A stretch of 64,000 bases of DNA from Mytilus edulis. Lineage: Eukaryota. This document shows, piece by piece, positions 484 to 51,072 of this stretch; the stretch's first letter is position 1; each line of letters opens with the position of its first letter. Location: assembly GCF_963676685.1 (NCBI RefSeq), contig NC_092356.1:248001-312000 (forward strand), read 5' to 3'. The translations under genes and the position numbers were made by a program. A model generated the notes under the pieces. The model worked only from the letters and a program-made list of their open reading frames with translations. It did no database searches and had not been told where the DNA came from.

Positions 484-549
484 CGATCTGACCGTCGCAC
501 ACAATATACTCGACACACGTGCTCTGGTAGTATGTTGTAGCTCTCTTGT
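484..549 (-). CDS. LRR gene A exon 2 (66 bp; NKRATTYYQSTCVEYIVCDGQIG); exon 3 presumably left of the window
   Basis: ttctatttcAG acceptor, G|GTAAAT donor, open phase 1-1 frame, homologous to exon 2 of the other paralogues. Confidence 0.88.
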
Positions 550-1033
550 CTGAAATAGAAAAATGATCGATGAAAAACCATTAATAGCCGATTTTAATTA
601 TTTCACTACTGCGTCACAAATATCATATGTAGACCAAAAAAAAACGAATTCTACGGTGACCTCTAACTTCTATATCATTTGTTGTCTGATGGAGAGTTGT
701 CTCATTGGCAATTATACTACATCTTCCAATTTTTATATGAATATTTGAAAGAGGGGATTCGCATTTCACATGATATACGATAGTTCCAGATTGGTTTTAC
801 CAAATGGACAGAAGTTTGCTACCGACGATCGCAATCCTATTGGGATGAGGTTCTGGTTGATGGTTAGTTTCTTGTGGCATACTTCTTCTATAACTTCAGA
901 CAAACAATGATACCAGTTTATCATGACGTTATGCCGTGGCTCTTTTTAAAATTACTAAATTAATATAAAAAAAAAAACATTCTCTTTTTGATATGTATAT
1001 ACATGAAAATAGAAGAATAAAATGAGAACTTAC

Positions 1034-1895
1034 TTAAATAATCAGCTGGGTCTTGACAAACAATATCCCCGCCAATGGTGATGTTATTTTCTTTAGAATA
1101 CTCTAAGAACCAGAGATACCCACACGTACAGAACCAACTGATTCCGTACAAATCCACGTGAGACAGGGCATCTAGACCTGTAAACATATTACCCTCAAGC
1201 TTGGTCATTATGTTGTCATTTAGAGAAATATACTTCAACTTTTTCAGAGCAGAAAACATGTCAGCTTGCAGCACCATTAAATGTGCACGTTCAAGGCGCA
1301 CTCGCTCCACTTCAAGCAAATTAAACAGAGCCCCGGTGGCCATTGTACTGCCTACGACTTGTGAGTTTATGATGGCGAATTCTCCGAGAGGATCACTGTA
1401 TTGTGCCATCTTTTTCACATTTAGTCCTTTGAAACCATCGGGATGCATGTTAGTGATGGATCCACCGGTAATATGAAACAAATTAACATCGCCAAACCCC
1501 GAAAACACGTCCGATGGAATCGATAGTAATCCACAATCAATAATCTTAACCTCGTCAATAAAGGAGAAATCAGTGAACGCAGCGCTGTCAAGGATTATAT
1601 CAGAGTTAGCATAGCATATCATATAAAGACTTGGAACATATTTTGAATCGAAGTTTCCCGTGTTGATACTCGTGAATCCAGAAAACGTGTTTGCTGCTAT
1701 TGTTCCAGATAGTTCTTCCAAAACTATCCGCTGTGGTTCTACGCTGTCAAAGTCAGCGTAAGCCAAAGGCAGAGACCAACTTCTTGCACTACAAGTGTAG
1801 AGAATTTGAGATGAATCGTAAGTACAGCCAACAGGAAGTGCAGACAACGGTGTCAGCGCACAGAAACATAAACACGCCACTATTGTGGAATACAT
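1034..1895 (-). CDS. LRR gene A exon 1: signal peptide, Cys cap, LRRs, LRRCT start
   Basis: ORF 960..1895; LRRs such as LKKLKYISLNDNIMTKLEGNMFTGL; WFCTCGYLW; donor TTAA|GTAAGT at 1034/1033, phase 1. Confidence 0.92.
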
Positions 1896-4800
1896 GTTTT
1901 GTCCTTTTCACTTCCTGATAGTTTTATAACAGATCCACATTTTATCATTCCATTGTGGGGTAAATACTGTGTATGAAGAATTCCTCCATTGATTTGGTTT
2001 AGTGTAATGATTTGGATTACCCGTTTATCCGATTACCATTTTAACCTACTATTTAATCATTTGAACATGCTTAGATTAAATGGTAATACACAATATTATT
2101 CTGGTAAATTGCTGTAACAACTTGTTTAAACTAGTGGGCGTCTTTCTATTTTCCTAGTTTGTAAAAAAAAAACCGAGTTGAACAAACTATGATCGCCCAT
2201 TATAGACAGTTGACCATTAATCTTTATAGCAAACAAAATCCTCAGATAAAGATAGAGGACTTTTTTACCAATTAAAAGAACCAAATAGTAAAACTAAACA
2301 AATCTAAATTTCGGGTAATTACCATAACCTAAAAGTTGAAATAGGAAGTTGTAAGGACAACCATAGCATATCAAGCAATCTTTAGAGTTGCAACAACGAT
2401 TTGTATATAAGATTATGAAAGTGTGGTTTGATCGCAAATGACATAGAAGTTAACAACTTACTACAAGCCTCCAACAATGAGCAAAACCAATGCCGTATAG
2501 TCAGCTGTAAAAGGCCCGAAAATGTCAAATGTAATTATCTCAACTGAGGAAGCTAACGGTCCTGTTTATATACAAATTTGACTGCTCCATAGGCTTACAT
2601 GCAAAACAGCTGATCTTTGAAAATTAAAAAATTAAAAATGCTACATAGAAAATTTGTTTCATGTTCATATCATGTATGTACTAATGTGAAATTGTGATTT
2701 AATCGAAAAAAAGAGGGTCATGCCATGAAGAATAAAAAGATACGTAATCCTGAAGTCAAAACATTTTTTTTCTACTTTCTGTTTGCTACTTTTACTAGGC
2801 CGCACCACTTCCAGTAAACATGATATCCTTTCACTTTCCTGGATTGATATCCTCCAAAAGATGCAAGATTTTTTTAAAGTCTATATATATGTTTCAATTC
2901 AGCATAAACCTATATTCAAACAGAAAAAATTGAGTTCAGAAAAAAAATCAGAAAAAAATGCACTATTTTGTTTCCCTCCATGTTGTAATACAAGACTGGT
3001 ACCAACAGTGTGCAAAAATCAAATACATCTATGATACACAGCAACAAACGACAACCACTGAATAACAGGCTCGGCGGGGTTAAATAAGTTTTAAGGCACC
3101 AATCCTCCATATACTGGGACAGTGGTGTATAATAGTAAAACATAAGAACAAACTATACAAATCAGTTGAAAAGGACTCAACCGCAAATAGAAAGCAGGAG
3201 GACATCAAACAAAACCACAAACCGGACGTGGCAGGGTATATTTACATCCTCACAACAAATAGGACACTAAGAAAATATCAGAAATTATTGCGGTTACTGA
3301 CAGCTAGTTCAAAGTCAATACAAATTATAAAGAAGCATGAATCTATGAATTAAATATCAATCCGTAAACTTCCGATCGTTTTAGTGTAAAGACGTCATTG
3401 TTGAAGTCCGTACTGAGATCTATACTTAATTTCTGTGTCATTTGGTCTCTTGTGGTGAGCTTTACTATTTGACATCATATCACATCTTCCTATTTTTATA
3501 TCAAAAAGTCAGAAAAACATGACCTTGTGCAATGCCAAGAAACAGGCATATTCCATGGCCATCAAATGTTGCATTGGCATAACTATGTTCTTTGTGATAC
3601 ATGTATGTTTAAACTTATAATTATTGACTTGTGTTAATACTGAGTTATACTTTGGGACTTTGCTTGAACCATTAAGGTGTAATTTGCGAATAGAATTATT
3701 ATTGATCTAATATTAAATTAAAGTACTTATTTTATCCTATTTTTTTTGGTTTAACAGAGTAGATCGCCAACTACCATACCACTTTAGTGATCGTCAAACA
3801 AATTTGACCAAGTTTTCTGCAACTAAACACCTTACTGTTGGAGCACTGATTTATTGCATATAGCTTAGTCTTTCTTCTTGTTTCCATTTTCTGCTTATAT
3901 TTCAATATCATCTTATTATCTACAGGACAGTCGTTTTTTTTGTTGTAGCGAAAGCGCCAACACTTCTGTACAGTTTGAAAACTAAATAGTAGTATAATGA
4001 AGTTCGATTCACTAAAAAGTTTTCTAAATGTTCAGTTGAATAAAACTTACGCAACTGACCTTGAAGCGATATCATAAAAACGGGTCCTTTTCTTTCGGGT
4101 GACGTACGTAGAATCCCGGTCGTGAGGTGGTCTATATACGTTATATATCATTTTAATTTGAATTCGGACAGGGGTAAAGCTCATAATCGTTATGTGTATA
4201 ATATGTGGTTTAAAACATCGATAATACAAGCGAACTGATTTTACAAATGAATCCTCTTTGAACGACAAAATTGGAAACCATGAAATCATCCTATGTTAAA
4301 GCATATTGTGGCCATCTGTTTGCAGCGCTTTTTTATCATGTTTATTTATTTAAATATTGATAAATAGAAATTATATCAGTTTGTGGATAAATTTTTTCAA
4401 AGTGGAAATGTTGACAAAATTTTATAGTGACGCTAACCTATATAGTATTTCGGATCGCCAAAATGATAAAAAAGAATATTTTATTGATATTTTGTTAACA
4501 AGTTTCAAATCTATATTTAATTTGATGGTTGTTGCAACATGTATGTTTTAGAGAAGCCGAAATCATCTACCACGGTGACCATAATTGAGAGAGGGCATAG
4601 ATATTTCAAGAACCAATAAATATGACATGATCTTGGGGCATTATTATCAAATGTTTTGTTTAAATGTGGCTCAATATTTTAAAACAGACATAGTAATCAC
4701 ATACATGTACATGTATATATAAGACATGCTAAAACAAAATCATAAACAAGTGAATCGACTAGCCGATATTAGAATCGTATTAGTTCTTAAAAACAATTTC

Positions 4801-6657: not shown

Positions 6658-6959
6658 TTAAGCTTCTGTATCTATGGAATCCATGTTACTGATAGTAGCT
6701 CCTGTTTGTTTCCTAGGCAATGGACCAGCTTGTAACTCTTCTAAAGACGGCGGCTCTCGTTGATTGCTCGCAATTCTGTTTTGGCTCGTGTTCCTGCTAG
6801 GTGATTGTTCAGGTTTGTTTGGTTCTATGGTGTCACTGACTTGCCGCTTAGTGTGGATAATAAGACCAAGAGCTGCACATGAGATGACCAGTGTGATTAA
6901 CAAGAGGATGTAGTTGATCAGCTCGAACATACTCACACACGTACTACCAATAGCAATAC
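6658..6959 (-). CDS. LRR gene B exon 3: transmembrane helix and ~60-aa low-complexity cytoplasmic tail
   Basis: ctAG|GT acceptor in phase 1; GIAIGSTC then hydrophobic INYILLLITLVISCAALGLII then HTKRQ; TAA at 6658. Confidence 0.88.
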
Positions 6960-7469: not shown

Positions 7470-7535
7470 CTGTTATTTTACCACACACCCCATCTGTCAC
7501 ACAAGTGTCCAAATTGTACTTTGTGGCACGTTTAT
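7470..7535 (-). CDS. LRR gene B exon 2 (66 bp; HKRATKYNLDTCVTDGVCGKITG)
   Basis: ctctttcAG acceptor, CAG|GTAAAC donor; supplies the fourth LRRCT cysteine. Confidence 0.88.
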
Positions 7536-7760: not shown

Positions 7761-8689
7761 TCTTCAGCCAAACATACGCGAATATTAATTTACATCATTG
7801 CTTTGATGGCTACTATATGTACCATCAGATGCACAATGTCATGTCGTAACTAAGGAGTACGCCGCCATCTTGACTTTCTATAAAAACTTAAATGTTCGAT
7901 AAATGCAACAGAATCTAAAATGAACTAGCACCTACCTCAAAAACTTCATTTTAATTAGATACTATCCGAATTTGAAGCGTACAAGTAACGAAATAATCTT
8001 TCGTCTGAAAGTTTTCAATCGTATGACGTCGTGTCTTGCCATGACGTACATTCGCCAAATCATTCGTGAAATTTCCCTGAATTTTATTTAAATTTTATTT
8101 TTATACATTTTCGAAGCTTTAGTGCATTTATTTTATTTCTTTTTTTGGGGTTATATATGCATTAGAATAGAAACAACTGTCATGCAATTGTTTTATAATC
8201 TCAACTTGCTGAAAATCCCAGTATCCCTGCAAGAATGTGTATCGCGCATGAATAGACTACAAAAGTAGTTTCGGAAACATGGTTTATCGAAGTGTAAACC
8301 AAGAGAAAAATTCTTCTTGACCAATCCAATTCAAGTATTTATAGATATGCAAATGATATAAGAATTATAATACCGTATTACTGCGTCAAGTGGGCACCGT
8401 GTGCTGACCATAATGTATTATCAGATTGATAATGTGTATCTATATCATATGCATTAAGGTAAATTATTTCTTTGTTGAATATAGATTATTTTTTTCTCTA
8501 ATGTGTGCTTAAAAGCAAATGTATGGTTTAACACATACTTAGCCGTACAATACAATAAAGTACCAGAACAACTTTGAAAACATACTTGCGTTCACCTGTT
8601 GGTGACCTTCTGCTGTTGGTTTTTTTTCTATGGTCGGGTTGTTGTCTCTTTGGTACATTCCCCATTTCCATTCTCAATTTTATTACGTA

Positions 8690-10800
8690 AACAACAGGGG
8701 TGCTTCATACAATGTCACGTACATTCGTAATCAACAGGAGTGCTACATACAATGACACTTACGTTTGTAATCAATAGGAGTGCTATAGACAATGTCACTT
8801 ACGTTTGTAATCAACAGGAGTGCTACAGACAATGTCTCTTACGTTCGTAATCAACAGGAGTGCTACAGACAATGTCTCTTACGTTCGTAATCAACAGGAG
8901 TGCTACAGACAGTGTCACTTACGTTCGTAATTAACAGGAGTGTTACATACAATGTCATTTGCGTTCGTAATCAACAGGATTTTTACAGATAATGTCACTT
9001 ACGTTCGTTATAACGTGGTGTGCTACATACAATGTCACTTACGTTCGTAATAACGTGGAGTGCTACATACAATGTCACTTACGTTCGTCATCAACAGGAG
9101 TGTTACAGATAATGTCACTAACGTTCGTAATCGACAGGAGTGCTACATACAATGTCACTTACATTCGTAATTAACAGGAGTGCTACAGACAACTTCACTT
9201 ACGTTCGTAATCAACAGGAGTCCTATAGACAATGTAACTTACGTTCTTAATCAACAGGAGTCCTATAGACAATGTCACTTACGTTCGTAATCAACAGTAG
9301 TACTATAGACCATGTCACTTACGTTCGTAATCAATAGGAGTGCCACGCACATTGTCTCTTACTATCCTAATCAACTGAAGTGCTTCAGAAAATGTCACTT
9401 ACGTTCGTAATCAATAGGAGTCCTATAGACAATGTAACTTACGTTCGTAATCAACAGGAGTCCTATAGACAATGTAACTTACGTTCTTAATCAACAGGAA
9501 TCCTATAGACAATGTAACTTACGTTCGTAATCAACAGGAGTCCTATAGACAATGTAACTTACGTTCTTAATCAACAGGAGTCCTATAGACAATGTCACTT
9601 ACGTTCGTAATCAACAGGAGCGTTCGTAATCAACAGGAGTCTTATAGACAATGTAACGTACGTTCGTAATCAACAGGAGTCCTATAGACAATGTCACTTA
9701 CGTTTGTAATCAACAGGAGTCCTATAGACAATGTCACTTACGTTTGCAATCAACAGGAGTCCTATAGACAATGTAACTTACGTTTGCAATCAACAGGAGT
9801 CCTATAGACAATGTCACTTACGTTCATAATCAATAGGCGTGCTATTGACAATGTCACTTACGTTCATAATCAACAGGCGTGCTACAGACTATGTCGCCAT
9901 TCATAGTGATATTGTTCTCTGACAAATAGTCCAAGAACCAGAGGTTTTCGCAGGAACAGTCCCAGCTGATGCCATACATATCTACTGAGGCAAGGCCAAA
10001 GACATTGGCAAACATGTTGTTTGGGATGGAGTGTTACAGATAATGTCACTTACGTTCGTTATAACGTGGTGTGCTACATACAATGTCACTTACGTTCGTA
10101 ATAACGTGGAGTGCTACATACCATGTCACTTACGTTCGTAATCAACAGGAGTGTTACAGATAATGTCACTAACGTTCGTAATCAACAGGAGTGCTACATA
10201 CAATGTCACTTACATTCGTAATCAACAGGAGTGCTACAGACAATTTCACTTACGTTCGTAATCAACAGGAGTCCTATAGACAATGTAACTTACGTTCTTA
10301 ATCAACAGGAGTCCTATAGACAATGTCACTTACGTTCGTAATCAACAGTAGTACTATAGACCATGTCACTTACGTTCGTAATCAATAGGAGTGCCACGCA
10401 CATTGTCTCTTACTATCCTAATCAACTGAAGTGCTTCAGAAAATGTCACTAACGTTCGTTATCAACAGGAGTCCTATAGACAATGTAACTTACGTTCGTA
10501 ATCAACAGGAGTCCTATAGACAATGTAACTTACGTTCTTAATCAACAGGAGTCCTATAGACAATGTTACTTACGTTCATAATCAACAGGAGTCTCATAGA
10601 CAATGTAACTTACGTTCGTAATCAACAGGAGTGCTATAGACAATGTCACTCACGTTTGTAATCAACAGGAGTCCTATAGACAATGTCAATTACGTTTGTA
10701 ATCAACAGGAGTCCTATAGACAATGTAACTTACGTTCGTAATCAACAGGAGTGCTATAGACAATGTCACTTACGTTCATAATCAACAGGCGTGCTACAGA
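8690..10800 (-). repeat. 40-bp minisatellite (~48 copies) in gene B intron 1; unit = last ~34 nt of exon 1 plus GTAAGT
   Basis: Unit caatgtcacttacgttcgtaatcaacaggagtgctacaga matches 10761-10800 across the exon/intron junction. Confidence 0.95.
9862..10029 (-). pseudogene. Duplicated 3' ~168 bp of gene B exon 1 embedded in the minisatellite
   Basis: Near-identical to 10774-10941 (four substitutions seen); no evident acceptor in front. Confidence 0.85.
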
Positions 10801-11650
10801 CTATGTCGCCATTCATAGTGATATTGTTCTCTGATAAATAGTCCAAGAACCAGAGGTTGTCGCAGGAACAGTCCCAGCTGATGCCATACATATCTACTGA
10901 GGCGAGGCCAAAGACATTGGCAAACATGTTGTTCGGGATGGTTGTAAATGTGTTATAGTTCAGGGAAGCATAATTTAACTTTGATAACGCATAGAACATG
11001 TCGGATGTTACTGTTGATAGGTGAGCGTTTTCAATCAGCACTCGTTCAATATTTGGCATATTAAACAATGCTCCGAACGCCAATGCACCGGACGTCAGCT
11101 CTGAGTTAATAATTGCGAACTCTCCCTTAGGATTCGGTACTGTTGTCATTCGATTTACGTTCAGGTTTTTGAAACTATCAGCCACCATATTAGAAATGGA
11201 TCCGCCTTGAATGTGGAATAGATTGACATCTCCAAAGTAAGAGAATGCTTCAACTGGAATGGATAGAATATCACAATTTAGAATTTCGACTTCTTCAACG
11301 TAACTGAAATCGGCAAACGCGTCTTTGTCCAAAATTAACTGCCCTCCGAAATAACACATGATATATAGGGCTGGCGCATAGTCTGGATCAAAAGTTGCTG
11401 TGTTAATACTACTGAATCCAGAAAATGCCGGTCCATTCGGTGCACTTGCTGAGATTTCGCCATCGACATCTTTCAGCATCAGTCTTTGCGGCTGCGCAGT
11501 TGTAAAGTCAGAAAATACAAGAGGCAAACTCCAACTTCTTGCGTTACAGGTGAATAAAATTGTCGATGCATCATATGTACAACCGGTAGGGTCCCCAGAT
11601 GCTGATGACAAAACATATATAACAAACAGAACACGAAAATGAAGACCCAT
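10774..11650 (-). CDS. LRR gene B exon 1; full CDS join 10774..11650, 7470..7535, 6658..6959 (414 aa)
   Basis: ORF 10766..11650 with signal peptide, LRRs and WDCSCDNLW; donor GAAC|GTAAGT, phase 1. Confidence 0.92.
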
Positions 11651-13884
11651 TGTTTTTTGTTATTAAATTATCTTACTATCTTCTGAGGCAATATTCCGCC
11701 ATATTGAAAGCAATACATTAAAAATTCATTTCTTTAAAGGTTAAGGTATAAACTATACATAAATCCAATTAAAGCCGATTAGATAAATATTGGCACAGTG
11801 GTAAAAGTAAAGTAATTTTGAATAATAAGGTCAAAAGATAATATTTAATAAAATATACACCTCAATACGAGAGATTAAATAAACAATAGAATCGTGTTGT
11901 TTCAGAATTAATTCAAAATTATTGTAGTTTTTCATGTACATTAACATGATTAAGTAGATAAACTCCTTATGTCGAAAATGACCTGTTTAGATATACATCC
12001 TAGTTATGGCTAGGAGTGACCTGTTTAGATATACATCCAAGTTATGGCTAGGAGTGACCTGTTTAGAAATACATCCAAGTTATGGCTAGTAGTTGTTATT
12101 CATTGTTATTAAATCACATTAAAGTTATTTCAAAAGTATGTATGGCATTACAGTACTGAAGTTGAAAAAGTAGGGGATTTGATTAGAAGATCGTAAAATG
12201 CAGACGCTCTGAGTCTCTGTGTTCGCCAATTCGTCACATGCAATTGGCCTTATAAAGTCTTTAGTTTTCTGTGTTGTGTCATGTGTTCTGTTATTGGTCT
12301 GTTTGTCCTTTTTTTGTTAGCCATGGCGTTGTCAGTTTTTTTCCAATTTATTAGTTTGACTGTCCCTCTTTTAAAAGAAACTCTATCTCGTCTTAAAATT
12401 GCTGTCTCTGAGATAATCTAGTCTTGGTTGTTTTTATCTTATTTTTATAGTATGTCTGATGTTGGCAAAACAAGTCGTAGATTTACTCTTTTGAATGGGA
12501 GCTACGTGTAGGTTGTGTTAAGCTTACTTTCATGTGTGGCGTGGATTATGCTCATTGTTGAAGGCTGAACAATGATCTAAAGTTACATTCAATAGTCTGT
12601 TTGTCTTGTAAAGATAATTGTGACATTTGCAATCATACCAAGTGTATAAAATATTTTTAAATTTGATATAACGTTTTTTGTAGTTATCTTCAGCTCAAAC
12701 TTTTTTCTCCAATGATTGATACATGTACTAAGTATTTTTTTGCAGATTGACAGAATTTGCTGTATTTCTAACTTAATAATTATCTATATTGCAAACAGTT
12801 TGTAATGAGGATGAATACAGTATCAGTAATGTCTCTCTATTGAAGAGGTTCCCCTTCATAAATCCTTTCATATTAATCAGAAAGGCTATTTAAAATAACG
12901 AGCGGAAAGAAGTTGCAACGGGATTTTAGCTAATGCCCTACAGTTGGATGTCTTATTGTGGCTAGAAAGGCTTATTTTTTTTTATATAAATAAGGCCGTT
13001 AGTTTTTCTCGTTTGAATTGTTTTACATTGTAACTTCGGGGCCTTTTATAGCTGACTATGTGGTATGGGCTTTGCTCATTGTTGAAGGCCGTACGGTGAC
13101 CGATTAAAGTTGTTAATTCATGTGTCATTATGGTAACTTGTAGAGAGTTATCTTATTGGCAATCATACCACATCTACTTTTTTATATGTATATATTTTTT
13201 TCAATGTAAAACAGTTGTTGACTGTGAAAACTAAAGGATGTATGATAAACGTATAAAACACCAAAAAAAAAATCAGCAAAACAAGATGCAGAAAAGATAT
13301 TGAAAAATTGATTTAAGATCACAGTTTTATTTAAGAAAATGGTTGTGTGGACTGCAAATCTCATGCTATCTAAGGACTCATTTCTAAATTTTATAGACGA
13401 GAACGTGTGTGATATTGGTGTAGAGATATACCGACAATTGTAAATAGTGTACATCGTTATACTTATTCTATTGGTGGTTGGATACTTTTAATTTATAACA
13501 GTCTACTAGTGAAAGGATATTCTTGACTTCATTCTGAAGGTGTGCTCATATTGGCAGAATGGACACAGAATACAGAATGCAGATGCCTTGAACTTGCAAA
13601 GTAGTAAAATCTGTAGACATATCTTTGAGTATTTTCTTTTTGCCCGTAAAACAACATCTTTTTTCAGTTTTTGAATGATAGCGTCATCTGCATTTAAAGT
13701 GCAAATTGCAAAAATCTTCAGCACGACATTTACCTAAAAATGTAAGAAAAATCAGTAAACCTGAGTTATTACCCCTGAAATAAAGCTTTTTCCACTAAAA
13801 GTTAAAACAGGTAAATTGCAAGAAAGATCAACAATACAAAGAGTAACGTTATTATATTACGTAACGATACTCATAATATAAAAA

Positions 13885-14570
13885 AAAGAAAAGATGTGGT
13901 ATGATTGCCAATGAGACAACTGTCCACAAGAGACATTAACAATTATAGGTCACCGTACGGCCTTCAACAATGAGCATACCCAAATCCGCATAGTCAGCTA
14001 TAAAAGGCCCCGATAAGACAATGTAAAACAATTCAAACGAGAAAACTAATGGCCTTATTTATATAAGAAAATGAACGAAAAACAAATATGTAACACATAA
14101 ATAAACGAGAACCACTAAATTACCGGCTCCTGACTTGGGACAGACACATACTACATAAATAATGTGGCGGGGTTAAACATGTTAGCGGGATCCCAACCCT
14201 CCCCCTAACCTGGGACAGTGGTATAACAGTACAACATAAGAACGAACTATAAAAACCAGTTGAAAAAGGCTTAACTCATCAGATGGACACAAATACAAGT
14301 GGACGCGGCCGGGTACTTATACATCCCGACACAAAAAGACACAATGAACAGATCTGAGAGTACTCGCAGTTATCTGACAGCTATATATATATAGCTAGTT
14401 CAAAGCCACTAACAACTAATAAAAAAATCATGCATCTTAGACTTAACTATCAATCCGTACACATCCAACATCCAATGGATTTAGTGTAAAGACGCTATAA
14501 ACAGCCAGACAAAAACATGACCTTGTGCAATGCCAAGTTACAGGTATCGACAGAGTGTAGATCCATGAAT
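13885..14570 (+). mobile_element. Long copy of the dominant dispersed repeat family (class unresolved); fragments at ~650-740, 2410-2570, 3030-3545, 12980-13185, 34555-34805, 43350-43915, 44215-44310, 46590-46850
   Basis: Recurrent aagatgtggtatgattgccaatgagacaact...gtcagctataaaaggcccc in both orientations. Confidence 0.75.
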
Positions 14571-14577
14571 ATGTATT

Positions 14578-14882
14578 TAAGGAATGACTGTAATATTTTT
14601 TCAGTCTATGAAGAAATAACATAAAAAATTTGGTGCAAACTGAATAACGCGCGTAGCGGGTTATTTAACAGTGTGAACCACATTTTTTATGTTATTTCGA
14701 ATAGACAGAATAAATATTACAGTCATTTCTTATAATTTAATTCTAAATTCCATTTTAAACCGTAGAAAACCATGAAAAATCGTTGATGACGTCACGGTCA
14801 CATGACTAAATTATGTCTATGGGCTCTTAACAAAATAACGTCAGCCAATCAAAAGACGCGTTACATCCAAAATTAAATTATA
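14578..14882 (+). mobile_element. Palindromic-head dispersed element; second copy at ~61555-61858
   Basis: Two near-identical ~300-bp copies with an internal inverted repeat around aataacgcgcgtagcgggttatt. Confidence 0.8.
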
Positions 14883-15007
14883 TGTATATAACATACTAGT
14901 AATATTTAGTTAGCTTTTAATTTACTGATAACAAAATCAATATTTATACCAATAAAACAATATTCAATGATCTTATTAAAGTATTGAATGGGTAACCTTT
15001 TAGCCAA

Positions 15008-17840: not shown

Positions 17841-18280
17841 AAAATAAACGCTGCTTTCTTTCTAAATTTCAGAAATGGTGTAATTTTCCCACGAGAACCC
17901 GTTTTAAGATCACATTTTAAAACTAATAAATTTCATAAAAAGGTTGAGAAAATGTCAATAACAACATAACACATTTTTACCATTTGGGAAATAAGTTGCA
18001 AATATGAAGGTATATATTTTATTAAATGCTTGAAACACTTGCAAATTGGTAAAAAATAGCTCCGTTGTATGTAATTTTTTGTAAAAAATCATTATGGGAT
18101 AGAAATTGTATTGAATGCCCCTAAATGCCCCTTTCATAATTTTCGACCCTTTTTATGTTTGATATTTAAATATGTGCATTAACTTTTGGATCTTGACCAC
18201 GTGTGAGACTTTTCTATATAACGGTAAAATTGGGAAATAAAATTATATAACGGGTATTTACGTTAATTTTGAAAACATAC

Positions 18281-18380
18281 NNNNNNNNNNNNNNNNNNNN
18301 NNNNNNNNNNNNNNNNNNNNNNNNNNNNNNNNNNNNNNNNNNNNNNNNNNNNNNNNNNNNNNNNNNNNNNNNNNNNNNNN
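18281..18380. other. Assembly gap (100 N, true size unknown)
   Basis: Run of 100 n. Confidence 0.99.
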
Positions 18381-20254: not shown

Positions 20255-20311
20255 CTGAACAACTTGACACTGTAGCACAGGTCTCAGCGTAAAACTTTGT
20301 CGCCTTTTTAT
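20255..20311 (-). CDS. LRR gene C exon 2 (57 bp; DKKATKFYAETCATVSSCSG); no transmembrane exon found downstream
   Basis: tatttgtAG acceptor, CAG|GTAAAT candidate donor, homology to paralogous exon 2. Confidence 0.82.
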
Positions 20312-25958: not shown

Positions 25959-26215
25959 TTACACCCAACCATCTACTTGTGACGATCTCAATGGTGGTTT
26001 CTGACCAGATGCCCCGCCCTTCTTCAGTGCATTCTGTACACGTGCCCAGGAGCTATTTCTCTTTTTCTCCAGATTTTCTTTGGCAATGACCAGTTTCCTT
26101 CTGACGTAACATATGATAACAAGTGCTACGATAGCTATCACCATGGTAACAGCTAGGATACAGTAACTGACAATCTCGATAATAGTCATACATATGGTTG
26201 GACCCAGGGTTATAC
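25959..26215 (-). CDS. LRR gene D exon 3: transmembrane helix and basic cytoplasmic tail
   Basis: tttcAG|GT acceptor; GITLGPTIC..IVSYCILAVTMVIAIVALVIICYVRRK; extends ORF 25959..26189. Confidence 0.9.
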
Positions 26216-26638: not shown

Positions 26639-26704
26639 CTGGTAAATCTCCACAAGCGTTTGCAGTGTCACACATCTCGTCATAATACTTGGAAGCTTTC
26701 TTGT
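26639..26704 (-). CDS. LRR gene D exon 2 (66 bp; NKKASKYYDEMCDTANACGDLPG)
   Basis: ttttcAG acceptor and CAG|GTGAGT donor, phase 1-1. Confidence 0.9.
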
Positions 26705-27809: not shown

Positions 27810-28686
27810 TCTGATATTCAGCAGGTGTACCGCAAATGATTCCTGATGGTAAGGCTATACCATTGGTTGTGGCATGAGTGAGGATCCATAAGTTATCGCA
27901 CGTGCATTCAAACGGGATACCATCTAGATCAAGGGAAGATAATCCCGCTAGTGTGCTAATCAAAGCAGTTTCTATCTTTGTTATCCCAGCATTGCCAGCA
28001 AATGACAAAGACGTCAACGCTGTATTCTGAGCGAACAGTGCATCATCAACTGAAGTCAGTCCAATGTTGTCGAATCTTATTGATTTGACAAGAGTCTGTC
28101 CATCAAGCATACCAACCGGGATTTGATTACCGGAAACCACTGTGTTCTTTATGACAAATTCGGCGGTCGGGACGGGAACGTCCAGTTTTTCTATAGATAG
28201 ACCCGTAAGAATATTAGATGCTAGTGTGTTCACTGAACCTCCTTCAATCCAGAGAGAGTTAAGTGTTACTAAGTTTGAGAAAACACTAGAAGGAAGCGAC
28301 TGAATGTCACAGTTACTTATTTTTAGTTCTTGAAGATAACTCATGCTCGAAAATAAAGCTTGTGAAATCGTAAGTGTTCCTCCAGAACTACAAATAACTT
28401 GTAAGCTTGCAGCATAATCAAGATCAATCAAATTAGCAGCGTACGATGAAAAGCCTGAGAAAGTGTTTGTTGGTAAAGTGCCGCTTACAGCATTGATGAT
28501 AAGACGCTGTGGATACGGATCAGTGAACCCGGTAAAGGTAAGTGGTGCTGTGTAACTTCCGAATGTACACGTATAGATACCTGTTGATGAATCTGTACTG
28601 TCGTACGTACATCCGGTAGGCTGTGCACTATACACATATCCGATGTACGTTGTACATAAGTACACAAACACTTCTACAATTTTCAT
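27810..28686 (-). CDS. LRR gene D exon 1; full CDS join 27810..28686, 26639..26704, 25959..26215 (399 aa)
   Basis: ORF 27793..28686; PFECTCDNLW LRRCT; donor CAGA|GTACGT, phase 1. Confidence 0.92.
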
Positions 28687-35198: not shown

Positions 35199-35419
35199 CT
35201 AAGTCCATGCATTTGAATCTCTTTTCTCCCTTCTTCCTCCTTTTCTCTTCTCTTTCCTCTGGTTTCCGTTTCTGCCATTGTCTTGCTTCGCTCTCAGTGT
35301 GCTGCGACGTAGATATATTACCAGTATAAGAGCAACGATACCAAATATCAGACACACAAATGTCACACAGTAACAGATCAACTGGAATAAACCAATACAA
35401 GAGCCGCCGACTACTATTC
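35199..35419 (-). CDS. LRR gene E exon 3: transmembrane helix and highly basic tail (alternative acceptor at 35475)
   Basis: ttttatAG|GA; GIVVGGSCIGLFQLICYCVTFVCLIFGIVALILVIYLRR; TAG at 35199. Confidence 0.85.
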
Positions 35420-35493
35420 CTATAAAATATAAATCAACTGGAATAAACCAATACAAGAGCCGCCGACTACTATTCCTATAAAATATAAATCAA
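35377..35493 (-). repeat. 56-bp direct duplication covering the exon 3 acceptor of gene E
   Basis: atcaactggaataaaccaatacaagagccgccgactactattcctataaaatataa occurs twice, offset 56. Confidence 0.93.
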
Positions 35494-36747: not shown

Positions 36748-36813
36748 CCATTTCTCCATTGCATGCATCAGTTGAGGTTGCAAACGCCTGTGCCCAAACT
36801 GCTAAACTTTTAT
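36748..36813 (-). CDS. LRR gene E exon 2 (66 bp; YKSLAVWAQAFATSTDACNGEMG)
   Basis: cttccAG acceptor, TGG|GTAAGA donor; same length and phase as paralogous exons. Confidence 0.82.
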
Positions 36814-37219: not shown

Positions 37220-37952
37220 ACTTGATTACTTACACCTAGGCTAGAAATGACAGCTGTTTCATCAAAAGTGATGTTATTTGTAACAGTGTAATTATAATAC
37301 AGAGTGATAACTTACATTGGTCAGCAGCCGGAGTGAAACAAACAGCTGCTCTATCAAAATGATGCTATTGGCTACAGTATAATCATAATATTCAGTGATA
37401 TATATAACTTACTTGTTCAGTAGCCGGAATGCAACACACAGCTGCTCCATCAAAAGTGATGTTACTGCTACAGTGTAATCATAATACAAAGTGATAACTT
37501 GCATTGTTGAGCAGCTGAAATGGAACAGACAGCTGCTCTGTCAAAAGTGATGTTATTGGCTACAGTATAATCATAATACCAAGTAATAACTTACATTGTT
37601 CAGCAGCTAGAGTGGAACAGACAGCTGCTCTGTCAAAAGTGATGTTATTGGCTACAGTATAATCATAATACCAAGTGATAACTTGCATTGTTCAGCAGCT
37701 GGAGTGGAACAGACAGCTGCTCTGTCAAAAGTGATGTTATTGGCTACAGTATAATCATAATACCAAGTGATAACTTACTTGTTCAGCAGCCGGAGAGGAA
37801 CACACAGCTGCTCTGTCAAAAGTGATGTTATTGGCTACAATATAATCATAATACCAAGTGATAACTTACATTGTTCAGCAGCTGGAGTTGAACAAACAGC
37901 TGCTCCGTCAAAAGTGATGTTATTGGCTACAGTGTAATCATAATACCAAGTG
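37220..37952 (-). repeat. ~92-bp tandem repeat (7 intronic copies plus the real junction) in gene E intron 1; unit = exon 1 end plus donor
   Basis: acttac/acttgc recurs at 37228, 37310, 37407, 37497, 37589, 37681, 37773, 37864. Confidence 0.93.
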
Positions 37953-41787: not shown

Positions 41788-42044
41788 CTACCATCCCTTT
41801 CGCATGGGCGGAGCTGTCGATGCAGGGGGTCTCTGACCACCCCCACCTCCATGTAGAAGAGCTTGTTGAACTTTCATCCATGCAATATTCCTCTTTTTCA
41901 TCAGTCTTTCTCTGTCAGTAATCAGATCTCGTCTAACATGGCATACGATTGCTAAAGCTAAAGCTCCAATAATTAAGGTAAACAACAATACTGCATACGC
42001 TATTATATTGTATAATATAAAACATTCCACTCCCCAACGGAAAC
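41788..42044 (-). CDS. LRR gene F exon 3: transmembrane helix and basic cytoplasmic tail
   Basis: ttgcAG|GT; GFRWGVEC..IIAYAVLLFTLIIGALALAIVCHVRR; tail homologous to gene D. Confidence 0.9.
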
Positions 42045-42489: not shown

Positions 42490-43266
42490 CTTCCTAAGTT
42501 TTGCCCTTCGTATTACTATGATCGGGGATTATAATATATTGACCTCTGCCGTTCTAGAGCAGTGGCTCGAAGTTTATCTTTTCGCCTTCTGTAATTCTAA
42601 GATCGGGGATTTTAAGAGTTTACTTACCTTAAGTTTGCTCCCCGAATATGATGCACAGGGGTTCAACGTTTTAACAATGCCCTACGTGTTCAAAGATTCG
42701 GGGATTTCAACTTTCACTTGTGTCCTCTGTGGAGCAAAGATAGGGGTTCAAACTTTTACGTGATACAAGAGTCGGTAATTTTGATGTTTACTTTTGCCCT
42801 CCGTGATACAAGTGCCAAAAAATGTATATGGGATTTAAATCTTTACATTTTCCTGCCCTCTGTGATACAGGGATCAGGGATGAGGACTTTTACCTTTGCC
42901 CTCCGTAATGAGGGATCAGGGAATAAGACTTTTACCTTTGCCCTCTGTGATAAGGGATCAGGGATTAAGACTTTTACATTTGCCCTCGGTGATAAGGGAT
43001 CAGAGATAAAGAAGTCTACCTTTGCCCACCGTGGAAAGGGATCAGGGATTAAGACTTTTACCTTTGCCCTCTGTGATACAGGGATTAGGACTTTTATCTT
43101 TGCCCTCCGTGATACAGGGGTTATGGATCAGGGATTAAGACTTTTACCTTTGCCCTCCGTGATACAGGGATCAGGGATTAAGATTTTTACCTATGCACTC
43201 CGTTATATAGGGATAAGGGATTAAGATTTTTACCTTTGCCCTCTGTGATACAAGGATCAGGGATTT
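42490..43266 (-). repeat. 42-43-bp tandem repeat in gene F intron 2; unit = exon 2 end plus donor, decaying leftwards
   Basis: tacctttgccctc(c/t)gtgata..ggatcagggattaagacttt repeated; matches 43224-43266. Confidence 0.9.
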
Positions 43267-43302
43267 CACATTCTTTGATGTAGTATTCTTTTCCTGTCCT
43301 TT
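43234..43302 (-). CDS. LRR gene F exon 2 (69 bp; KRTGKEYYIKECEIPDPCITEGKG)
   Basis: ttctattgacAG acceptor, AAG|GTAAAA donor, two conserved cysteines. Confidence 0.87.
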
Positions 43303-44331: not shown

Positions 44332-45211
44332 TTTCATACAGCGCTGGTGTGGTACATGTATAGCCGGTCTCTATATCGTATCCGCTCGCATTCGCCGTAT
44401 TGACGATCCAGATATTTTCACACGAACAATTCCATTCAGTTCCCATCAAGTTCACACTCGATAGTAGGTCAATGCCATCAAAGATCGTGGAGGAAATCTC
44501 GGTAAATGCATTGTACTGTAGTGAAATCTTCTCTAGTAAAGTATTCTGAGAAAAATCATCTGCTCTTACGACGGTTAGTCCGAGGTTGTCAAGTACTACA
44601 CTGACTAAATTAGTCTGTGAGTACAATAGTCCTTGTGGTAAAGTTGTACTAGGTAATGTAACACCAATCATAGCTAGTTCACCTTTCGGATCTGGAACGG
44701 TGGTTAGCTTCTGTATATCGAGTCCGGTAAAGGCGTCATTAGCCAGAGTGGTCAATGAGCCACCGTACACCAAGAAGTAATTGAGTGAACCTATGGCTGA
44801 GAAAGCCGATGACGTAAACCCACTGCTGATAACACAGTTGATAATTGATAGTTCCTGGAGGTACGACATCCCGGTAAATGTTCCCGAGAATAAAAGTAGG
44901 GTGCCACCTGTAGAGCAGCGTATTTCTAGAGACGCGGGATAATCGGGATCAAGTGTTCCCATTCCAGAAAAACCGGAAAAAGTCGATGTTGGGTTACTAG
45001 CAGGTAGTTGTCCATGTACATTATAAATCTTCATCCTTTGTGGGATCGGACTAGAGAAGGATGAATACGACAAAGGAAGAGAGACCGATGGATAATCACA
45101 TTCGTATACCCCTCGGGCTGAACCATCGGTATCAACGTAAGTACATCCAGATTGTGCTGCGCCATTAACCATCACAGCGCCACACATCAATATTACTAAT
45201 AACATCAACAT
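44332..45211 (-). CDS. LRR gene F exon 1; full CDS join 44332..45211, 43234..43302, 41788..42044 (401 aa)
   Basis: ORF 44312..45211; WNCSCENIW; donor GAAA|GTAAAT, phase 1. Confidence 0.92.
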
Positions 45212-47646: not shown

Positions 47647-48107
47647 TCATTGTCCGTTTGCCATTGAAAATTCTAAATCCGTTTTTGATTTGTTACTCCT
47701 TTCATTTGTCGTGTAACTATTTCCCAAAGGAGCAATTTTGTCTGCTTTAATTTCTTTATTCAAATCATCTTTTTCCAGATCAGAATTGTTTGGAAGATCA
47801 AAATGCTTTATCTCGTTCGGGAATGAAAATCTCTTCCTCATCGCTTTCTTAATTGGAGGCAATTTAAATCCGTTTACTCCTGTCGAAGCTGGTGGAATCA
47901 TATTGACCACACCTTTGTAAAGGGAGTCTTGTACTTTAATCCAAGCGTTCTTTTTCTTCTGCTCTAGTCGGAATTTTGGCATAGCAATATGAAGTCGGGT
48001 GTTAAGGTACAGATAAATGGCCGTCAATGTCACGAGTAAACTACCACACGTAACAACATATCCAAACACTTGGAAAATCGTATGACATCGTGGGTCTGCA
48101 TTTATAC
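47647..48107 (-). CDS. LRR gene G exon 3: transmembrane helix and extended (~115 aa) cytoplasmic tail
   Basis: ttttttcAG|GT inside ORF 47647..48336; GINADPRC..VFGYVVTCGSLLVTLTAIYLYL; KKKNAWIKVQDSL matches tails of D and F. Confidence 0.88.
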
Positions 48108-48134
48108 CTGAAAAAATAGATATTGAAAATTGTA

Positions 48135-48560
48135 CATCAAAGATACCAGAGGGACATTGAAACTCATAGATCGAAGATAAAATGCCAAAAATACATGCAA
48201 ACAAACAAACCGTTGTACACAAGAAACGACATAGAAAACTAAATACTAAGCAACACGAAACCCACCAACAGCTGGGGTTATTCCAGGTGCTTCCGGAAGG
48301 GTAAGCAGATTCTGATCCACTTTTAGCATCCGTCATGTTGCTGATGTTATTACAAACCCGGTATATTGTGTATTTTGGTAGGTCACATGTGTGTAAAGGG
48401 AACGGGAGCGTCTGGCGTATATACTAAATTTAGTCCTGGTATCTATGATGAGTTTATTTATAGTTACGACATTTATAAGAAGCATATGCGATATCATCTG
48501 AGAAAAGTATATTCCATAACGGTAAACCGTCCGTAAAATTTACGAAGGGATGATTTCAAG
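48135..48560 (-). mobile_element. Diverged inverted copy of the Penelope-like 3' end in gene G intron 2
   Basis: ccaggtgcttccggaagggtaagcagatt is the reverse-complement counterpart of ~15882-15910. Confidence 0.7.
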
Positions 48561-49396: not shown

Positions 49397-49459
49397 CTGG
49401 GATGTTCCCACAAGGATCATACGGACAGTTTTCATCTTGGAATATTGTCGCTCTTTGTA
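49397..49459 (-). CDS. LRR gene G exon 2 (63 bp; LQRATIFQDENCPYDPCGNIPG)
   Basis: cattacAG acceptor, CAG|GTCAGT donor, phase 1-1. Confidence 0.88.
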
Positions 49460-50177
49460 CTGTAATGATATAAATAATTTATTTCAATTTTTACTGTCAT
49501 TAAACATGTACAATGTTTGAGGCAATTCAACACTTAGCCTTGGCTTTCTTGTATATCAATTTAAAAAAAAAAACTAATCTTAAACTTGGTACATGTGGGG
49601 TGAATATCAATATTAAAACTGTAAAAATTGTTCGATAAAACTTCGTTTTCTTCTTGTACAGGTGCCGAAACACTATCCAACAAAGAGAAAGGAAAAAACT
49701 TTGAGGTTCATAGTTCGCCGGAAGAAGTGAAAAACTGTAGTATTTCCAAACAACCAAAGCAGGTATTTAGACCAGATACATGTTAATATTAAACAACAAA
49801 AAATCATTACAAATAGTATCAACAGGTCAAATTAACATAAAAGTACGATTTGAGAGTACTCGCAGTTACTGACAGCTAGTTAAAAGGAAAAAAAAAACAC
49901 AATTAATAATATAAAAAAAAAACATGCGTCAGAGACTAAAATCAACTAAAACACATATCAAGGATCTAGTATTTTAACATCATGGACAGTCAAAGAAGAC
50001 ATGACTTGTGCAATGCCAAGAAATAAATGTATCGCCAGGCAGTAGGATAGTCTGGAATTTACCTCTTTATAGAAAGAAAATGAACGTGTGTGTGTCTTAA
50101 AACATCCCGTTTGAAAAGAATACAAAAGTTTTTACAATTATATATAAAGATGACCCGCTAGTGGAGTATGTACTTAC

Positions 50178-51072
50178 AATTATATGACGAAGGCTCGCCA
50201 CAGACAACTGCTCCAACTATACTGATGTTGTGTTCAACTGAATAATCAAGAAACCAAACATTAGAACAACTACAATTCAAGGGGACATCACTCAAGTCTA
50301 GAAACATCAGCGCATCTAATCCAGAAAATATGTTATTTGGAAGCTCTTGAAAATTGTTTCCTGCAATACTTAAGTTACGGACTAATGTATTTTGGGAGAA
50401 CATATTGGCTTCTATAGAATCCAGGCCAGTGTTTTTCAGCATGATTGTTGTTACCGTTGTCAAAGGATTTAGAAAACCAGATGCGAGCTCTCCAGTATTG
50501 ATGGGAGAGTTATAGATTATGAATGTCCCTAGTGGAGTAGGTGAACTAGACCTTGCAACATTTAATCCATTCAGACTGTTGGTGTTGGTAGCTCCAATAG
50601 AACCTCCTTCAATCTTGAAATAATTCAACGTTCCGAAATCGGAGAAAACGCTATCAGGCAAGTCGGATATAACACAATTTGTCATATAGAATTCCTGGAT
50701 GTAATCCATACCCGCAAACGTTCCGGCACTTATATCCAATGTTCCGCCATTAACACATTCGATTTCTAACAACGTAGGATAGTCAGTATCGACTGTTCCT
50801 GTATTGAATGAACTGAATCCAGAAAACGAGGGAGAACTTAACGATCCTGATACGTTATAGATCCGGATTCTTTGTGGATCGGGAGAGGAGAAATCTGTCA
50901 TTACAAGGGGAAACGATACAGAATTAAACTCGCAATCAAAACGACCAATTAAACTGGCTGTGTCGTCCAAAGCACACCCTGTTGGAGCTCCACTAAGTGC
51001 AAACTTGAATAAGTTGAAAAAATCAAAAATCAAACAGAAAAAAATCCTGAAAATTTTTTTTGAACACATCAT
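50178..51072 (-). CDS. LRR gene G exon 1; full CDS join 50178..51072, 49397..49459, 47647..48107 (472 aa)
   Basis: ORF 50158..51072; PLNCSCSNVW; donor AATT|GTAAGT, phase 1. Confidence 0.92.

What the first reader, a model, noticed from the sequence alone, without database searches (positions are those of the whole stretch)
484..51072. Seven-member cluster of diverged TIR-less LRR receptor-like genes with their own juxtamembrane and tail motifs
Seen: seven co-oriented paralogues with open exon frames, strongly diverged LRR ectodomains on a fixed scaffold, an extra membrane-proximal cysteine pair split over exons 2 and 3, and (in the five complete genes) one TM helix and a short tail with no TIR or kinase domain. 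Established: LRR ectodomains capped by Cys-rich LRRNT/LRRCT form the ligand-binding part of Toll-like receptors and agnathan VLRs. Inference: this is a lineage-expanded recognition-receptor repertoire (immune, self/non-self or adhesion) that signals through a partner. I cannot assign it to a named family.
Basis: partly seen in the sequence, partly recalled or inferred. Interest (0 to 1): 0.82.

Follow-up and report, generated by a model that had tools for sequence, protein, structure and literature searches.

The report
Mussel tandem cluster of LRR membrane proteins
Seven neighbouring mussel genes (ten in the whole cluster) encode small cell-surface proteins with a leucine-rich-repeat outer part, one membrane helix and a short tail; they belong to an unnamed family shared by molluscs and an annelid, and nothing tested marks them as a fast-evolving immune repertoire.

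Summary
Seven co-oriented minus-strand paralogues have the same three-exon plan with GT-AG introns in phase 1. Exon 1 carries the signal peptide, N-cap, eight LRR rungs and most of the LRRCT. Exon 2 has 19-23 codons. Exon 3 carries the TM helix and tail. Five genes are complete in the window. g1's exon 3 lies 0.5-0.9 kb outside it. No exon 3 was found for g3, and the N gap lies 1.9 kb downstream of g3's exon 2. RNA contigs from three studies show both junctions of g4 exactly.

The genome appears to be Mytilus edulis. It holds ten such genes, all in one ~104-kb array. The family also occurs in scallops (again clustered), oysters, ark shells, clams, gastropods and the annelid Owenia. Public records give its members assorted automatic names.

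There is no TIR, kinase or other domain. The closest folds are ordinary capped LRR ectodomains (Nogo receptor, LINGO, LRRTM, Slitrk, VLR).

The "lineage-expanded repertoire" reading is only partly supported. Copies are old (54% identity or less) and most have stable orthologues. Variability is not concentrated on the concave face, and a few transcript variants are mostly synonymous. The best reading is an unnamed eLRR-only receptor or co-receptor family. Its hallmarks are a disulfide-closed juxtamembrane hairpin and, in many members, a C-terminal GW motif. Function is inferred. Interest is modest.

The parts
1034..1895 (-). g1 exon 1: signal peptide, N-cap, LRRs, LRRCT up to the third Cys. Subfamily A.
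   Evidence: ORF; alignment; phase-1 GT donor at 1033
484..549 (-). g1 exon 2: fourth LRRCT Cys plus the first stalk Cys. Exon 3 lies outside the window at about -948..-540.
   Evidence: AG/GT borders; TM exon found in L011
10774..11650 (-). g2 exon 1. Subfamily A.
7470..7535 (-). g2 exon 2
6658..6959 (-). g2 exon 3: second stalk Cys, TM helix, 65-residue divergent tail, stop codon
20711..21632 (-). g3 exon 1. 89% identical to a 302-aa M. californianus protein that also has no TM in its model.
20255..20311 (-). g3 exon 2, with a good GT donor after it. No exon 3 was found downstream.
18281..18380 (.). Assembly gap (N) in the stretch where g3's last exon could lie. It touches no modelled exon. 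Not filled.
27810..28686 (-). g4 exon 1
   Evidence: junction 26704>27810 seen in RNA contigs of three studies
26639..26704 (-). g4 exon 2
25959..26215 (-). g4 exon 3: stalk Cys, TM helix, canonical tail (KKRNSSWARVQNALKKGG..GQKPP...GWV), stop codon
   Evidence: identical to the tail of P0001
37870..38725 (-). g5 exon 1. Has CTD in place of the CxC motif.
36748..36813 (-). g5 exon 2. Lacks the fourth LRRCT Cys but keeps the stalk Cys.
35199..35419 (-). g5 exon 3: stalk Cys, TM helix, basic tail ending NAWT. The acceptor is duplicated 56 bp upstream.
44332..45211 (-). g6 exon 1. Groups with scallop P0010/P0014.
43234..43302 (-). g6 exon 2. Its end overlaps a 42-bp tandem array.
41788..42044 (-). 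g6 exon 3: stalk Cys, TM helix, canonical tail ending KGW
50178..51072 (-). g7 exon 1
49397..49459 (-). g7 exon 2
47647..48107 (-). g7 exon 3: stalk Cys, TM helix, long tail that keeps the KKKNAWIKVQ motif

Best explanation
The window holds seven of the ten genes of a single tandem array. The genome appears to be Mytilus edulis, on contig C13, ~195-299 kb, all genes on one strand. They belong to an unnamed, old family of extracellular-LRR-only type I membrane proteins found in molluscs and at least one annelid.

Each protein has these parts, in order:
- a signal peptide;
- a one-disulfide N-cap;
- eight LRR rungs;
- a four-cysteine LRRCT whose last cysteine lies on exon 2;
- a roughly 20-residue hairpin closed by one further disulfide that spans the exon 2/3 junction and sits directly on the membrane;
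- one TM helix followed by a basic stop-transfer stretch;
- a 36-128-residue tail with no known domain.

The ancestral-type tail reads KK-x-N-x-S/A-W-x-K-V-Q-x-A-L/M ... G-Q-K/R-P-P ... G-W-x at the C-terminus. g4 and g6 keep it, g7 keeps part of it, and so do scallop, oyster and ark-shell members. The other paralogues carry replaced tails.

Shown: gene structure, transcription and splicing of g4, family range, absence of TIR, kinase and other domains, and the co-occurrence pattern of the cysteines.

Inferred: the solenoid, held close to the membrane, binds an extracellular or same-membrane partner. The signal is passed on by a cytosolic or membrane partner that recognises the tail motifs, as in other eLRR-only adhesion or co-receptor proteins. 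Paralogues with different ectodomain surfaces and different tails would then have different ligands and outputs.
For: Gene models and frames.

Splicing of g4: seen in contigs of three studies, and a true stranded RNA run covers exons only, from the expected strand.

Public model: the 399-aa P0001 is 98.5% identical to the g4 model.

Genome count: ten genes, all on C13, minus strand. The contig length of 75,045,669 equals that of an M. edulis RefSeq protein's contig.

Family range: Pecten, Ylistrum (four members on one 253-kb contig), Mizuhopecten, Ostrea, Tegillarca, Mya, Dreissena, Mactra, Haliotis, Babylonia and Owenia.

Structure: the AF2 model has pLDDT 82.7, with an LRR solenoid, a short beta-hairpin at 315-325 and a helix at 326-380.

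Cysteines: the pairs are present or lost together.

Tail motif and GW end: seen across taxa.

Domains: none in the tails. PDB profile matches end at the LRRCT.

Fold neighbours: capped eLRR receptors.

Known class: eLRR-only single-pass proteins act as adhesion or guidance receptors (PMC9710760).
Against: No functional datum exists for any member. No paper was found that treats the family.

The tail and TM are on average less conserved than the ectodomain (0.21 and 0.25 vs 0.33 pairwise identity). A single shared intracellular partner therefore cannot hold for all paralogues.

The disulfide pairing is inferred from co-occurrence only.

Tissue and condition of expression are unknown because run identities are coded.

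g3 may be a secreted or truncated form.
Confidence: 0.6

Rival explanations
1. One reading: a diversifying recognition repertoire (immune or self/non-self). Duplication and positive selection on the ligand-binding face would generate many specificities, comparable to expanded bivalve TLRs or to scallop LRR-only pattern-recognition proteins.
For: The paralogues share only ~33% ectodomain identity on an invariant scaffold.

The central concave positions x5 and x7 are near saturation in most rungs.

Subfamily A expanded independently in mussels and in scallops.

An M. coruscus / M. californianus member (P0166/P0082) has no orthologue in this assembly, which could be presence/absence variation.

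Scallop LRR-only proteins are reported to bind PAMPs (PMC5877582).
Against: There are only ten genes, and none is recent: the closest pair is 54% identical.

Six window genes have stable orthologues.

The concave face as a whole is no more variable than the convex face (p=0.84), and it has an invariant charged stripe (R61, E120; E176 nearly so).

The listed g4 transcript variants are six synonymous against one changed codon.

The g4 transcript is present in about 14 RNA-like runs of at least 7 studies, which suggests common rather than rare induced expression.
Confidence: 0.17
2. A cis-acting auxiliary subunit. The short, membrane-hugging LRR domain, the TM helix and the basic juxtamembrane stretch would associate in the same membrane with a channel or receptor and tune it. 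The vertebrate comparators (LRRC26-type BK gamma subunits, GPIb-beta/GPIX in the GPIb-IX complex) are cited from my own knowledge and were not tested.
For: There is no stalk between the LRRCT and the membrane beyond a 20-residue disulfide hairpin.

A basic cluster follows the TM directly, and the TM is strongly similar in a subset of members across phyla: g2, Tegillarca, Pecten, Ostrea and Owenia.

Size and architecture match that class.
Against: The TM is not conserved family-wide (0.25 mean identity).

No sequence or fold match to such subunits ranked among the best hits, although GPIb-alpha appears at rank 48 among generic LRR hits.

No partner is known.
Confidence: 0.15
3. Decaying or non-functional copies: the array is a graveyard of pseudogenes or an annotation artefact.
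For: g3 lacks a detectable last exon.

Tandem arrays of exon-end plus donor sit in g2, g5 and g6.

Transposon remnants lie between the genes.
Against: All seven exon-1 frames are open over ~300 codons with all scaffold cysteines kept.

The five in-window models are intact.

g4 is transcribed and spliced.

Orthologues are conserved across species and phyla.
Confidence: 0.03

Closest known systems
eLRR-only ('LRR-only') single-pass membrane proteins, e.g. the C. elegans lron family/DMA-1 and vertebrate LRRTMs (PMC9710760)
   Same: Both have a signal peptide, a capped LRR ectodomain as the only extracellular domain, one TM helix and a short tail with no domain. They are presumed adhesion or receptor proteins that need partners.
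   Different: No orthology is shown; similarity is the generic LRR kind (E about 1e-12 to 1e-24). This family has its own disulfide-closed juxtamembrane hairpin and a GW C-terminus. It lacks the LRRTM-type C-terminal PDZ ligand (recalled from my own knowledge).
Toll-like receptors and 'LRR-only TLR-like' proteins (PMC8609888)
   Same: Both have a single-cysteine-cluster type ectodomain (LRRs plus a membrane-proximal LRRCT) and a TM helix. TLR3 and TLR13 ectodomains are among the best sequence hits. One oyster member carries the automatic name 'toll-like receptor 13'.
   Different: There is no TIR domain in any member. The ectodomain has 8 rungs, against 20 or more in TLRs. The paper itself does not count such proteins as TLRs.
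Nogo receptor (RTN4R/RTN4RL2), LINGO-1, NGL, Slitrk and LRRTM2 ectodomains
   Same: These are the best fold matches (Foldseek E 5e-8 to 1e-5, TM-score to target 0.55-0.75). Rung number and caps are similar.
   Different: RTN4R is GPI-anchored, and LINGO and NGL carry an Ig domain (both from my own knowledge). Here there is a TM helix with a tail and no Ig or FN3 domain. Sequence identity is 14-21%.
Agnathan variable lymphocyte receptors
   Same: Both have a small capped LRR solenoid with a similar number of rungs. VLR-A and VLR-B are among the top sequence hits.
   Different: In this family the whole LRR domain is encoded in one germline exon, with no flanking cassette arrays. There are ten fixed genes. 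The protein has a TM helix and a cytoplasmic tail.
Scallop LRR-only proteins CfLRRop-1 to -6 (PMC5877582)
   Same: They are molluscan proteins with LRRs as the only domain, proposed as pattern-recognition receptors.
   Different: They are described as having 1-4 LRR motifs. Nothing shows that they share the stalk, TM or tail hallmarks.

Membership tests
Toll-like receptor | Cytoplasmic TIR domain | tested here: not met
   Pfam scans of all seven exon-1 products, five exon-3 products and five full-length homologues found no TIR even at E<=1. The proteins end 36-128 residues after the TM, at a stop whose position is conserved.
Toll-like receptor | LRR ectodomain with LRRCT next to a single TM helix | tested here: met
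eLRR-only single-pass proteins (a class, not a clade) | LRRs are the only extracellular domain; one TM helix; tail without a domain | tested here: met
   Class definition taken from PMC9710760.
Variable lymphocyte receptor | Incomplete germline gene completed from flanking LRR cassettes | tested here: not met
   Each gene has the complete N-cap-to-LRRCT domain in one open exon. The whole genome holds ten loci and no cassette arrays.
FLRT / LINGO / LRIG / AMIGO / NGL (automatic names given to some homologues) | FN3 or Ig domain between the LRRCT and the TM | tested here: not met
   Only 20-45 residues lie between the LRRCT and the TM. No Ig or FN3 Pfam hit.
Nogo receptor (reticulon-4 receptor) | GPI anchor in place of a TM helix and tail (from my own knowledge) | tested here: not met
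   A hydrophobic helix is followed by a basic stretch and a 36-128-residue hydrophilic tail.
This unnamed mollusc/annelid family | Ten-cysteine pattern: N-cap pair, two solenoid Cys, four LRRCT Cys, two stalk Cys | tested here: met
   Met in g2, g4, g6 and g7. g1 and g3 are met as far as their sequence goes. g5 lacks one LRRCT pair.
This unnamed mollusc/annelid family | PQR-L rung 1, FSGF, and D-x-[DN]-Y motifs in the first rungs | tested here: met
   These are invariant or nearly invariant columns.
This unnamed mollusc/annelid family | C-terminal G/A-W-x end | tested here: inconclusive
   Present in g4 (GWV), g6 (GW) and g5 (AWT), and in many homologues including Owenia. Absent in g2 and g7 and in the three members outside the window.
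BK-channel gamma subunits (LRRC26 type) / GPIb-IX subunits | Orthology or a specific similarity of TM and juxtamembrane segments | not tested
   No sequence of these was at hand from a tool. They did not appear among the 60 best PDB sequence hits. GPIb-alpha ranks 48 by fold.

The most novel reading that the evidence does not exclude
These TIR-less LRR membrane proteins would be one half of a split receptor. [quoted passage not shown] The conserved tail helix and the C-terminal GW motif would be the docking site. That would define a spiralian-wide signalling module not yet described.
Probability: 0.07. Interest if true: 0.72.

Novelty: new member of a known kind. Interest (0 to 1): 0.3.

Why it matters
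Bivalves are known for very large innate-immune gene families, and any LRR cluster is easily read as part of that. This cluster is different. It is a small, old, syntenic family kept from annelids to molluscs, and databases label it by chance resemblance (TLR13, FLRT1-like, slit-like, PLA2-inhibitor-like).

Defining the family by its cysteine pattern, its three-exon plan and its tail motifs would correct those labels. It would also give a tractable set of ten genes for asking what a domain-less LRR receptor signals through in spiralians. The practical value is for annotation and hypothesis building. No long-standing question is settled by it.

Tried and rejected
Dead ends.
- A word search with the stalk/TM/tail part of a scallop member found only scallop proteins.
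- The protein-atlas look-up of the P0001 tail gave no usable hit. The whole-domain look-up gave only generic LRR clusters.
No orthologous DNA could be fetched, so no dN/dS was run.
- Paper searches by topic and by six gene identifiers found no treatment of the family.
- g3's last exon was sought by tblastn and by an exon-3 HMM in 11651-20254, and genome-wide with P0166. Nothing was found.
- The alternative end of the M. californianus g3 orthologue (…NKLLK) is not encoded in the window.
- Rfam found nothing on the highly covered repeat in g4's intron 1.
- The exhaustive profile search was swamped by giant multi-LRR proteins. Only about 45 single-stretch hits of 240-560 aa among the best 150 look like family members.

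Ideas rejected.
- A specially conserved TM helix. This holds for a subset only; mean identity is 0.25 against 0.33 for the LRRs.
- A hypervariable concave face.
- A PDZ-ligand reading of the C-terminus. The last residue varies (V, I, A, N, G, D, T or none) while the G-W before it is kept.
- The weak Sec31 and WBP-1 Pfam hits in tails, which are far below the cut-offs.

No complex prediction was run, because no specific pair is claimed to bind.

Full report
**What is in the sequence**

The window is AT-rich (GC 0.31-0.37). It carries seven minus-strand ORFs of 294-314 codons. They align over their whole length at 32-35% identity, with g1/g2 at 53%, and have 30 invariant columns. Pfam sees only LRR families in them (LRR_8, LRR_5, LRR_4).

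Each ORF runs a few codons past a GT donor that sits at the same codon and phase in all seven. Downstream of each I found a 57-69-nt exon 2 bounded by AG and GT. For five genes I also found an exon 3 that opens with AG and runs to a stop.

All introns are GT-AG and phase 1. The five in-window models give proteins of 414 (g2), 399 (g4), 380 (g5), 401 (g6) and 472 (g7) residues.

I joined the exons only inside local scripts, for the frame check, alignments and trees. Searches used single exons by reference, or public proteins that the tools returned. The fold was made from the public protein P0001, not from a joined window model.

**The gap**

The N run at 18281-18380 lies 1.87 kb downstream of g3's exon-2 donor (20255) and 6.6 kb upstream of g2's start codon. 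No modelled exon touches it, so none of the models depends on continuity or frame across it.

It does leave g3 open-ended. In the other genes intron 2 is 0.4-1.3 kb. No exon-3-like sequence occurs in the read letters between g3 and g2, by tblastn or by an HMM of exon 3, nor anywhere in the genome. The M. californianus orthologue of g3 (P0004, 89% identical) is also modelled without a TM.

**Transcription**

The g4 region (25900-28750) was laid on three contig sets from different studies and on one raw RNA run. The joint 26704>27810 is present in all three contig sets. The joint 26215>26639 is present in two. Both have CT..AC ends on the + strand, which is GT..AG on the gene's strand, exactly as modelled.

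The stranded raw run covers exons only, at low depth, with all first mates on the + strand. This fits a minus-strand mRNA. About 14 RNA-like runs from at least 7 studies hold roughly the exonic share of the words (0.34-0.50, against an exon share of 0.42).

The public M. galloprovincialis protein P0001 (399 aa) matches the g4 model at 98.5% with no gaps.

**Anatomy of the protein**

The order of parts is as follows.
- A signal peptide.
- An N-cap hairpin with one disulfide (P-x-G-C ... Y-x-C).
- Eight LRR rungs. The first carries an invariant P-Q-R-L, followed by F-S-G-F and D-x-[DN]-Y.
- An LRRCT (C-x-C ... C-x-x-P).
- Exon 2: [DN]-K-[KR]-A-T-x-Y-Y-x3-C-x5-7-C-x3-4-G.
- Exon 3: [IV]-x-x-G-x-x-C, then the TM helix about eight residues later, a basic stretch, and the tail.

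The AlphaFold model of P0001 (20-row alignment, pLDDT 82.7, pTM 0.70) shows the solenoid. It also shows a short beta-hairpin at 315-325 and one long helix from 326 to 380. That helix is the TM continued into the tail's SSWARVQNALKK segment.

Counting cysteines across 35 members supports the pairing. The second Cys of C-x-C and the first Cys of exon 2 are both present in 30 members and both absent in one (g5). The second Cys of exon 2 and the Cys of exon 3 are both present in 26 and both absent in 2, never one alone in full models. The first pair is therefore the ordinary LRRCT disulfide, split by intron 1. The pairing itself is inferred.

Two further invariant cysteines sit inside the solenoid, at rung 2 position 6 and rung 3 position 9. 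Whether they are bonded is unknown.

**Tails**

No Pfam family reaches its cut-off in any exon 3 or in full-length homologues. A PDB profile search matches nothing beyond the LRRCT.

g4 and g6 carry a tail that recurs almost letter for letter in Pecten, Ylistrum, Tegillarca and Ostrea: KK-x-N-x-[SA]-W-x-K-V-Q-x-A-[LM] ... G-Q-[KR]-P-P ... G-W-[VI]. g7 keeps its first half.

A G/A-W-x C-terminus is wider still. It appears in Mya, in the annelid Owenia and in several unnamed sequences.

The other paralogues have unrelated tails. These are g2, g5 apart from its ...NAWT end, g1, and the three members outside the window.

On average the TM and tail are less conserved than the ectodomain.

**Size and age of the family**

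The genome (1.37 Gb) has ten matching loci and no more. This holds with g4's exon 1 at E<1e-10 and with P0166 at E<1e-5. All are on contig C13, minus strand, between about 195 and 299 kb. The three extra members and g1 have TM exons of their own.

The contig length of 75,045,669 equals that recorded for an M. edulis RefSeq protein of this family. The window therefore appears to come from the M. edulis chromosome-level assembly.

Named relatives occur in other Mytilus species and in these genera: Pecten, Ylistrum, Mizuhopecten, Ostrea, Tegillarca, Mya, Dreissena, Mactra, the gastropods Haliotis and Babylonia, and the annelid Owenia.

Their automatic names are a random sample of LRR proteins: TLR13, FLRT1-like, slit-like, reticulon-4-receptor-like, PLA2-inhibitor-like, platelet glycoprotein V-like, LINGO-like. 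Four Ylistrum members of both subfamilies share one 253-kb contig, so the clustered state predates the mussel-scallop split.

Trees (quick IQ-TREE searches with SH-aLRT support, the careful search did not finish) show two subfamilies.
- Subfamily A holds g1, g2 and the three upstream genes. It expanded on the mussel side, next to a parallel scallop expansion.
- Subfamily B holds g3-g7 and consists of old lineages. g6 groups with scallop P0010/P0014 (support 99 in the first tree, 83 in the second). g3 and g4 are sisters.
- Each of g1, g3, g4, g5, g6 and g7 pairs, at support 95-100, with a 63-70% identical protein from another unnamed assembly (89% for g3, from M. californianus).
- No recent copies exist.
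- One lineage seen in M. coruscus and M. californianus (P0166/P0082, sister to g3, with a TM) has no orthologue in this assembly. Loss, presence/absence variation or the gap could explain it.

**Test of the repertoire idea**

I assigned LRR registers to the eight rungs and compared column entropy among the ten paralogues.
- Concave positions 3, 5, 7 and 8: 1.75 bits.
- Convex and lateral surface positions: 1.83 bits (Mann-Whitney p=0.84 against concave).
- Core positions: 1.17 bits (p<0.001 against both).

Positions 5 and 7 are near saturation in most rungs. Position 3 carries invariant charged residues (R61 and E120; E176 nearly so), and N143 is invariant. The surface is therefore free to vary everywhere except a conserved stripe. 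That fits old paralogues with different partners and a shared contact. It does not single out the binding face.

The exonic transcript variants listed for g4 are six synonymous against one changed codon. This is a small sample and eight more were not shown.

**Comparison with known families**

By sequence, the best solved relatives are LRRC15, TLR13/TLR3 ectodomains, ALS, LRRTM, VLRs, LGR4, NGLs and Slit. By fold they are LINGO-1, Nogo receptors, NGL-3, LRRTM2, Slitrk, Toll, VLR-based repebodies, Slit2 and GPIb-alpha.

All of these matches are generic for capped extracellular LRRs, at 14-21% identity. The defining features of TLR, VLR, FLRT/LINGO/NGL and Nogo receptor are not met (see the membership rows).

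The family fits the descriptive class of eLRR-only single-pass proteins (PMC9710760). It also fits "LRR-only TLR-like" in the loose sense of PMC8609888. Scallop LRR-only proteins reported as PAMP binders (PMC5877582) could not be compared, for lack of sequences.

**Verdict**

It is unsupported on "lineage-expanded repertoire".

This is an uncharacterised but publicly annotated, old spiralian family of small LRR membrane proteins, kept as a tandem array. It is novel as a family definition, not as a kind. Interest is modest.

Noticed in passing
window 8686-10807; 37262-37952; 42854-43265; 35377-35493: Tandem arrays are seeded from exon ends. There are about 53 copies of a 40-bp unit holding the last codons of g2 exon 1 plus its GTAAGT donor. 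There are 7.5 copies of a 92-bp unit over the end of g5 exon 1, and about 10 copies of a 42-bp unit over the end of g6 exon 2. A 56-bp duplication covers g5's exon-3 acceptor. Three of seven genes share this odd habit.
   Followed up: partly
window 27244-27819 (g4 intron 1): This stretch has enormous depth in every RNA data set (up to ~80,000 summed contig depth; 500+ raw reads per bin on both strands), with many variants and loose ends. It looks like a very abundant, transcribed interspersed repeat. There is no Rfam match.
   Followed up: partly
window 30568-32616, minus strand: Three consecutive ORFs form a hAT-type transposase remnant between g4 and g5: a zinc finger (PF25431), DUF4371, and the hAT dimerisation domain (E 1e-9).
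   Followed up: yes
window 15107-15781, plus strand: A 224-codon ORF has a reverse-transcriptase-like ...FRYIDDV... motif but no Pfam hit at E<=0.01. A related fragment lies near 24345-24745 (84-89% identical at the peptide level). It is probably a decayed retroelement.
   Followed up: partly
genome G000, C13:195429-221001 (outside the window): Three further family members, all subfamily A and all on the minus strand, each have a TM exon and an unrelated long acidic or basic tail. One corresponds to the public 447-aa model P0078, in which exon 2 is skipped.
   Followed up: partly
P0009 / P0010 (Pecten maximus isoforms X2 / X1): The two isoforms share the ectodomain and exon 2 but use alternative last exons. 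These have different pre-TM, TM and tail sequences; one has the canonical tail and the other ends ...LRWI. Alternative TM/tail exons may be a family trait.
   Followed up: no
P0166 / P0082 versus G000: A TM-bearing sister lineage of g3 is present in M. coruscus and M. californianus but has no orthologue in this assembly; the best hit is g3 itself at 58%. Loss, presence/absence variation, or sequence hidden in the gap at 18281-18380 are all possible.
   Followed up: partly
window 47647-48423, minus strand: The open frame continues 316 nt upstream of g7's exon-3 acceptor through a Cys- and Phe-rich hydrophobic stretch. An ATG ORF of 229 codons starts at 48336. There is no Pfam hit and it is not part of the homology-based model.
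   Followed up: no
window 23135-23773; 33824-34554; 57027-57415; 60920-64000: Several clean minisatellites (57 bp x 11, 49 bp x 15, 23 bp x 17, 54-62 bp x 6-10) lie in introns and in the gene-free 13 kb beyond g7.
   Followed up: no
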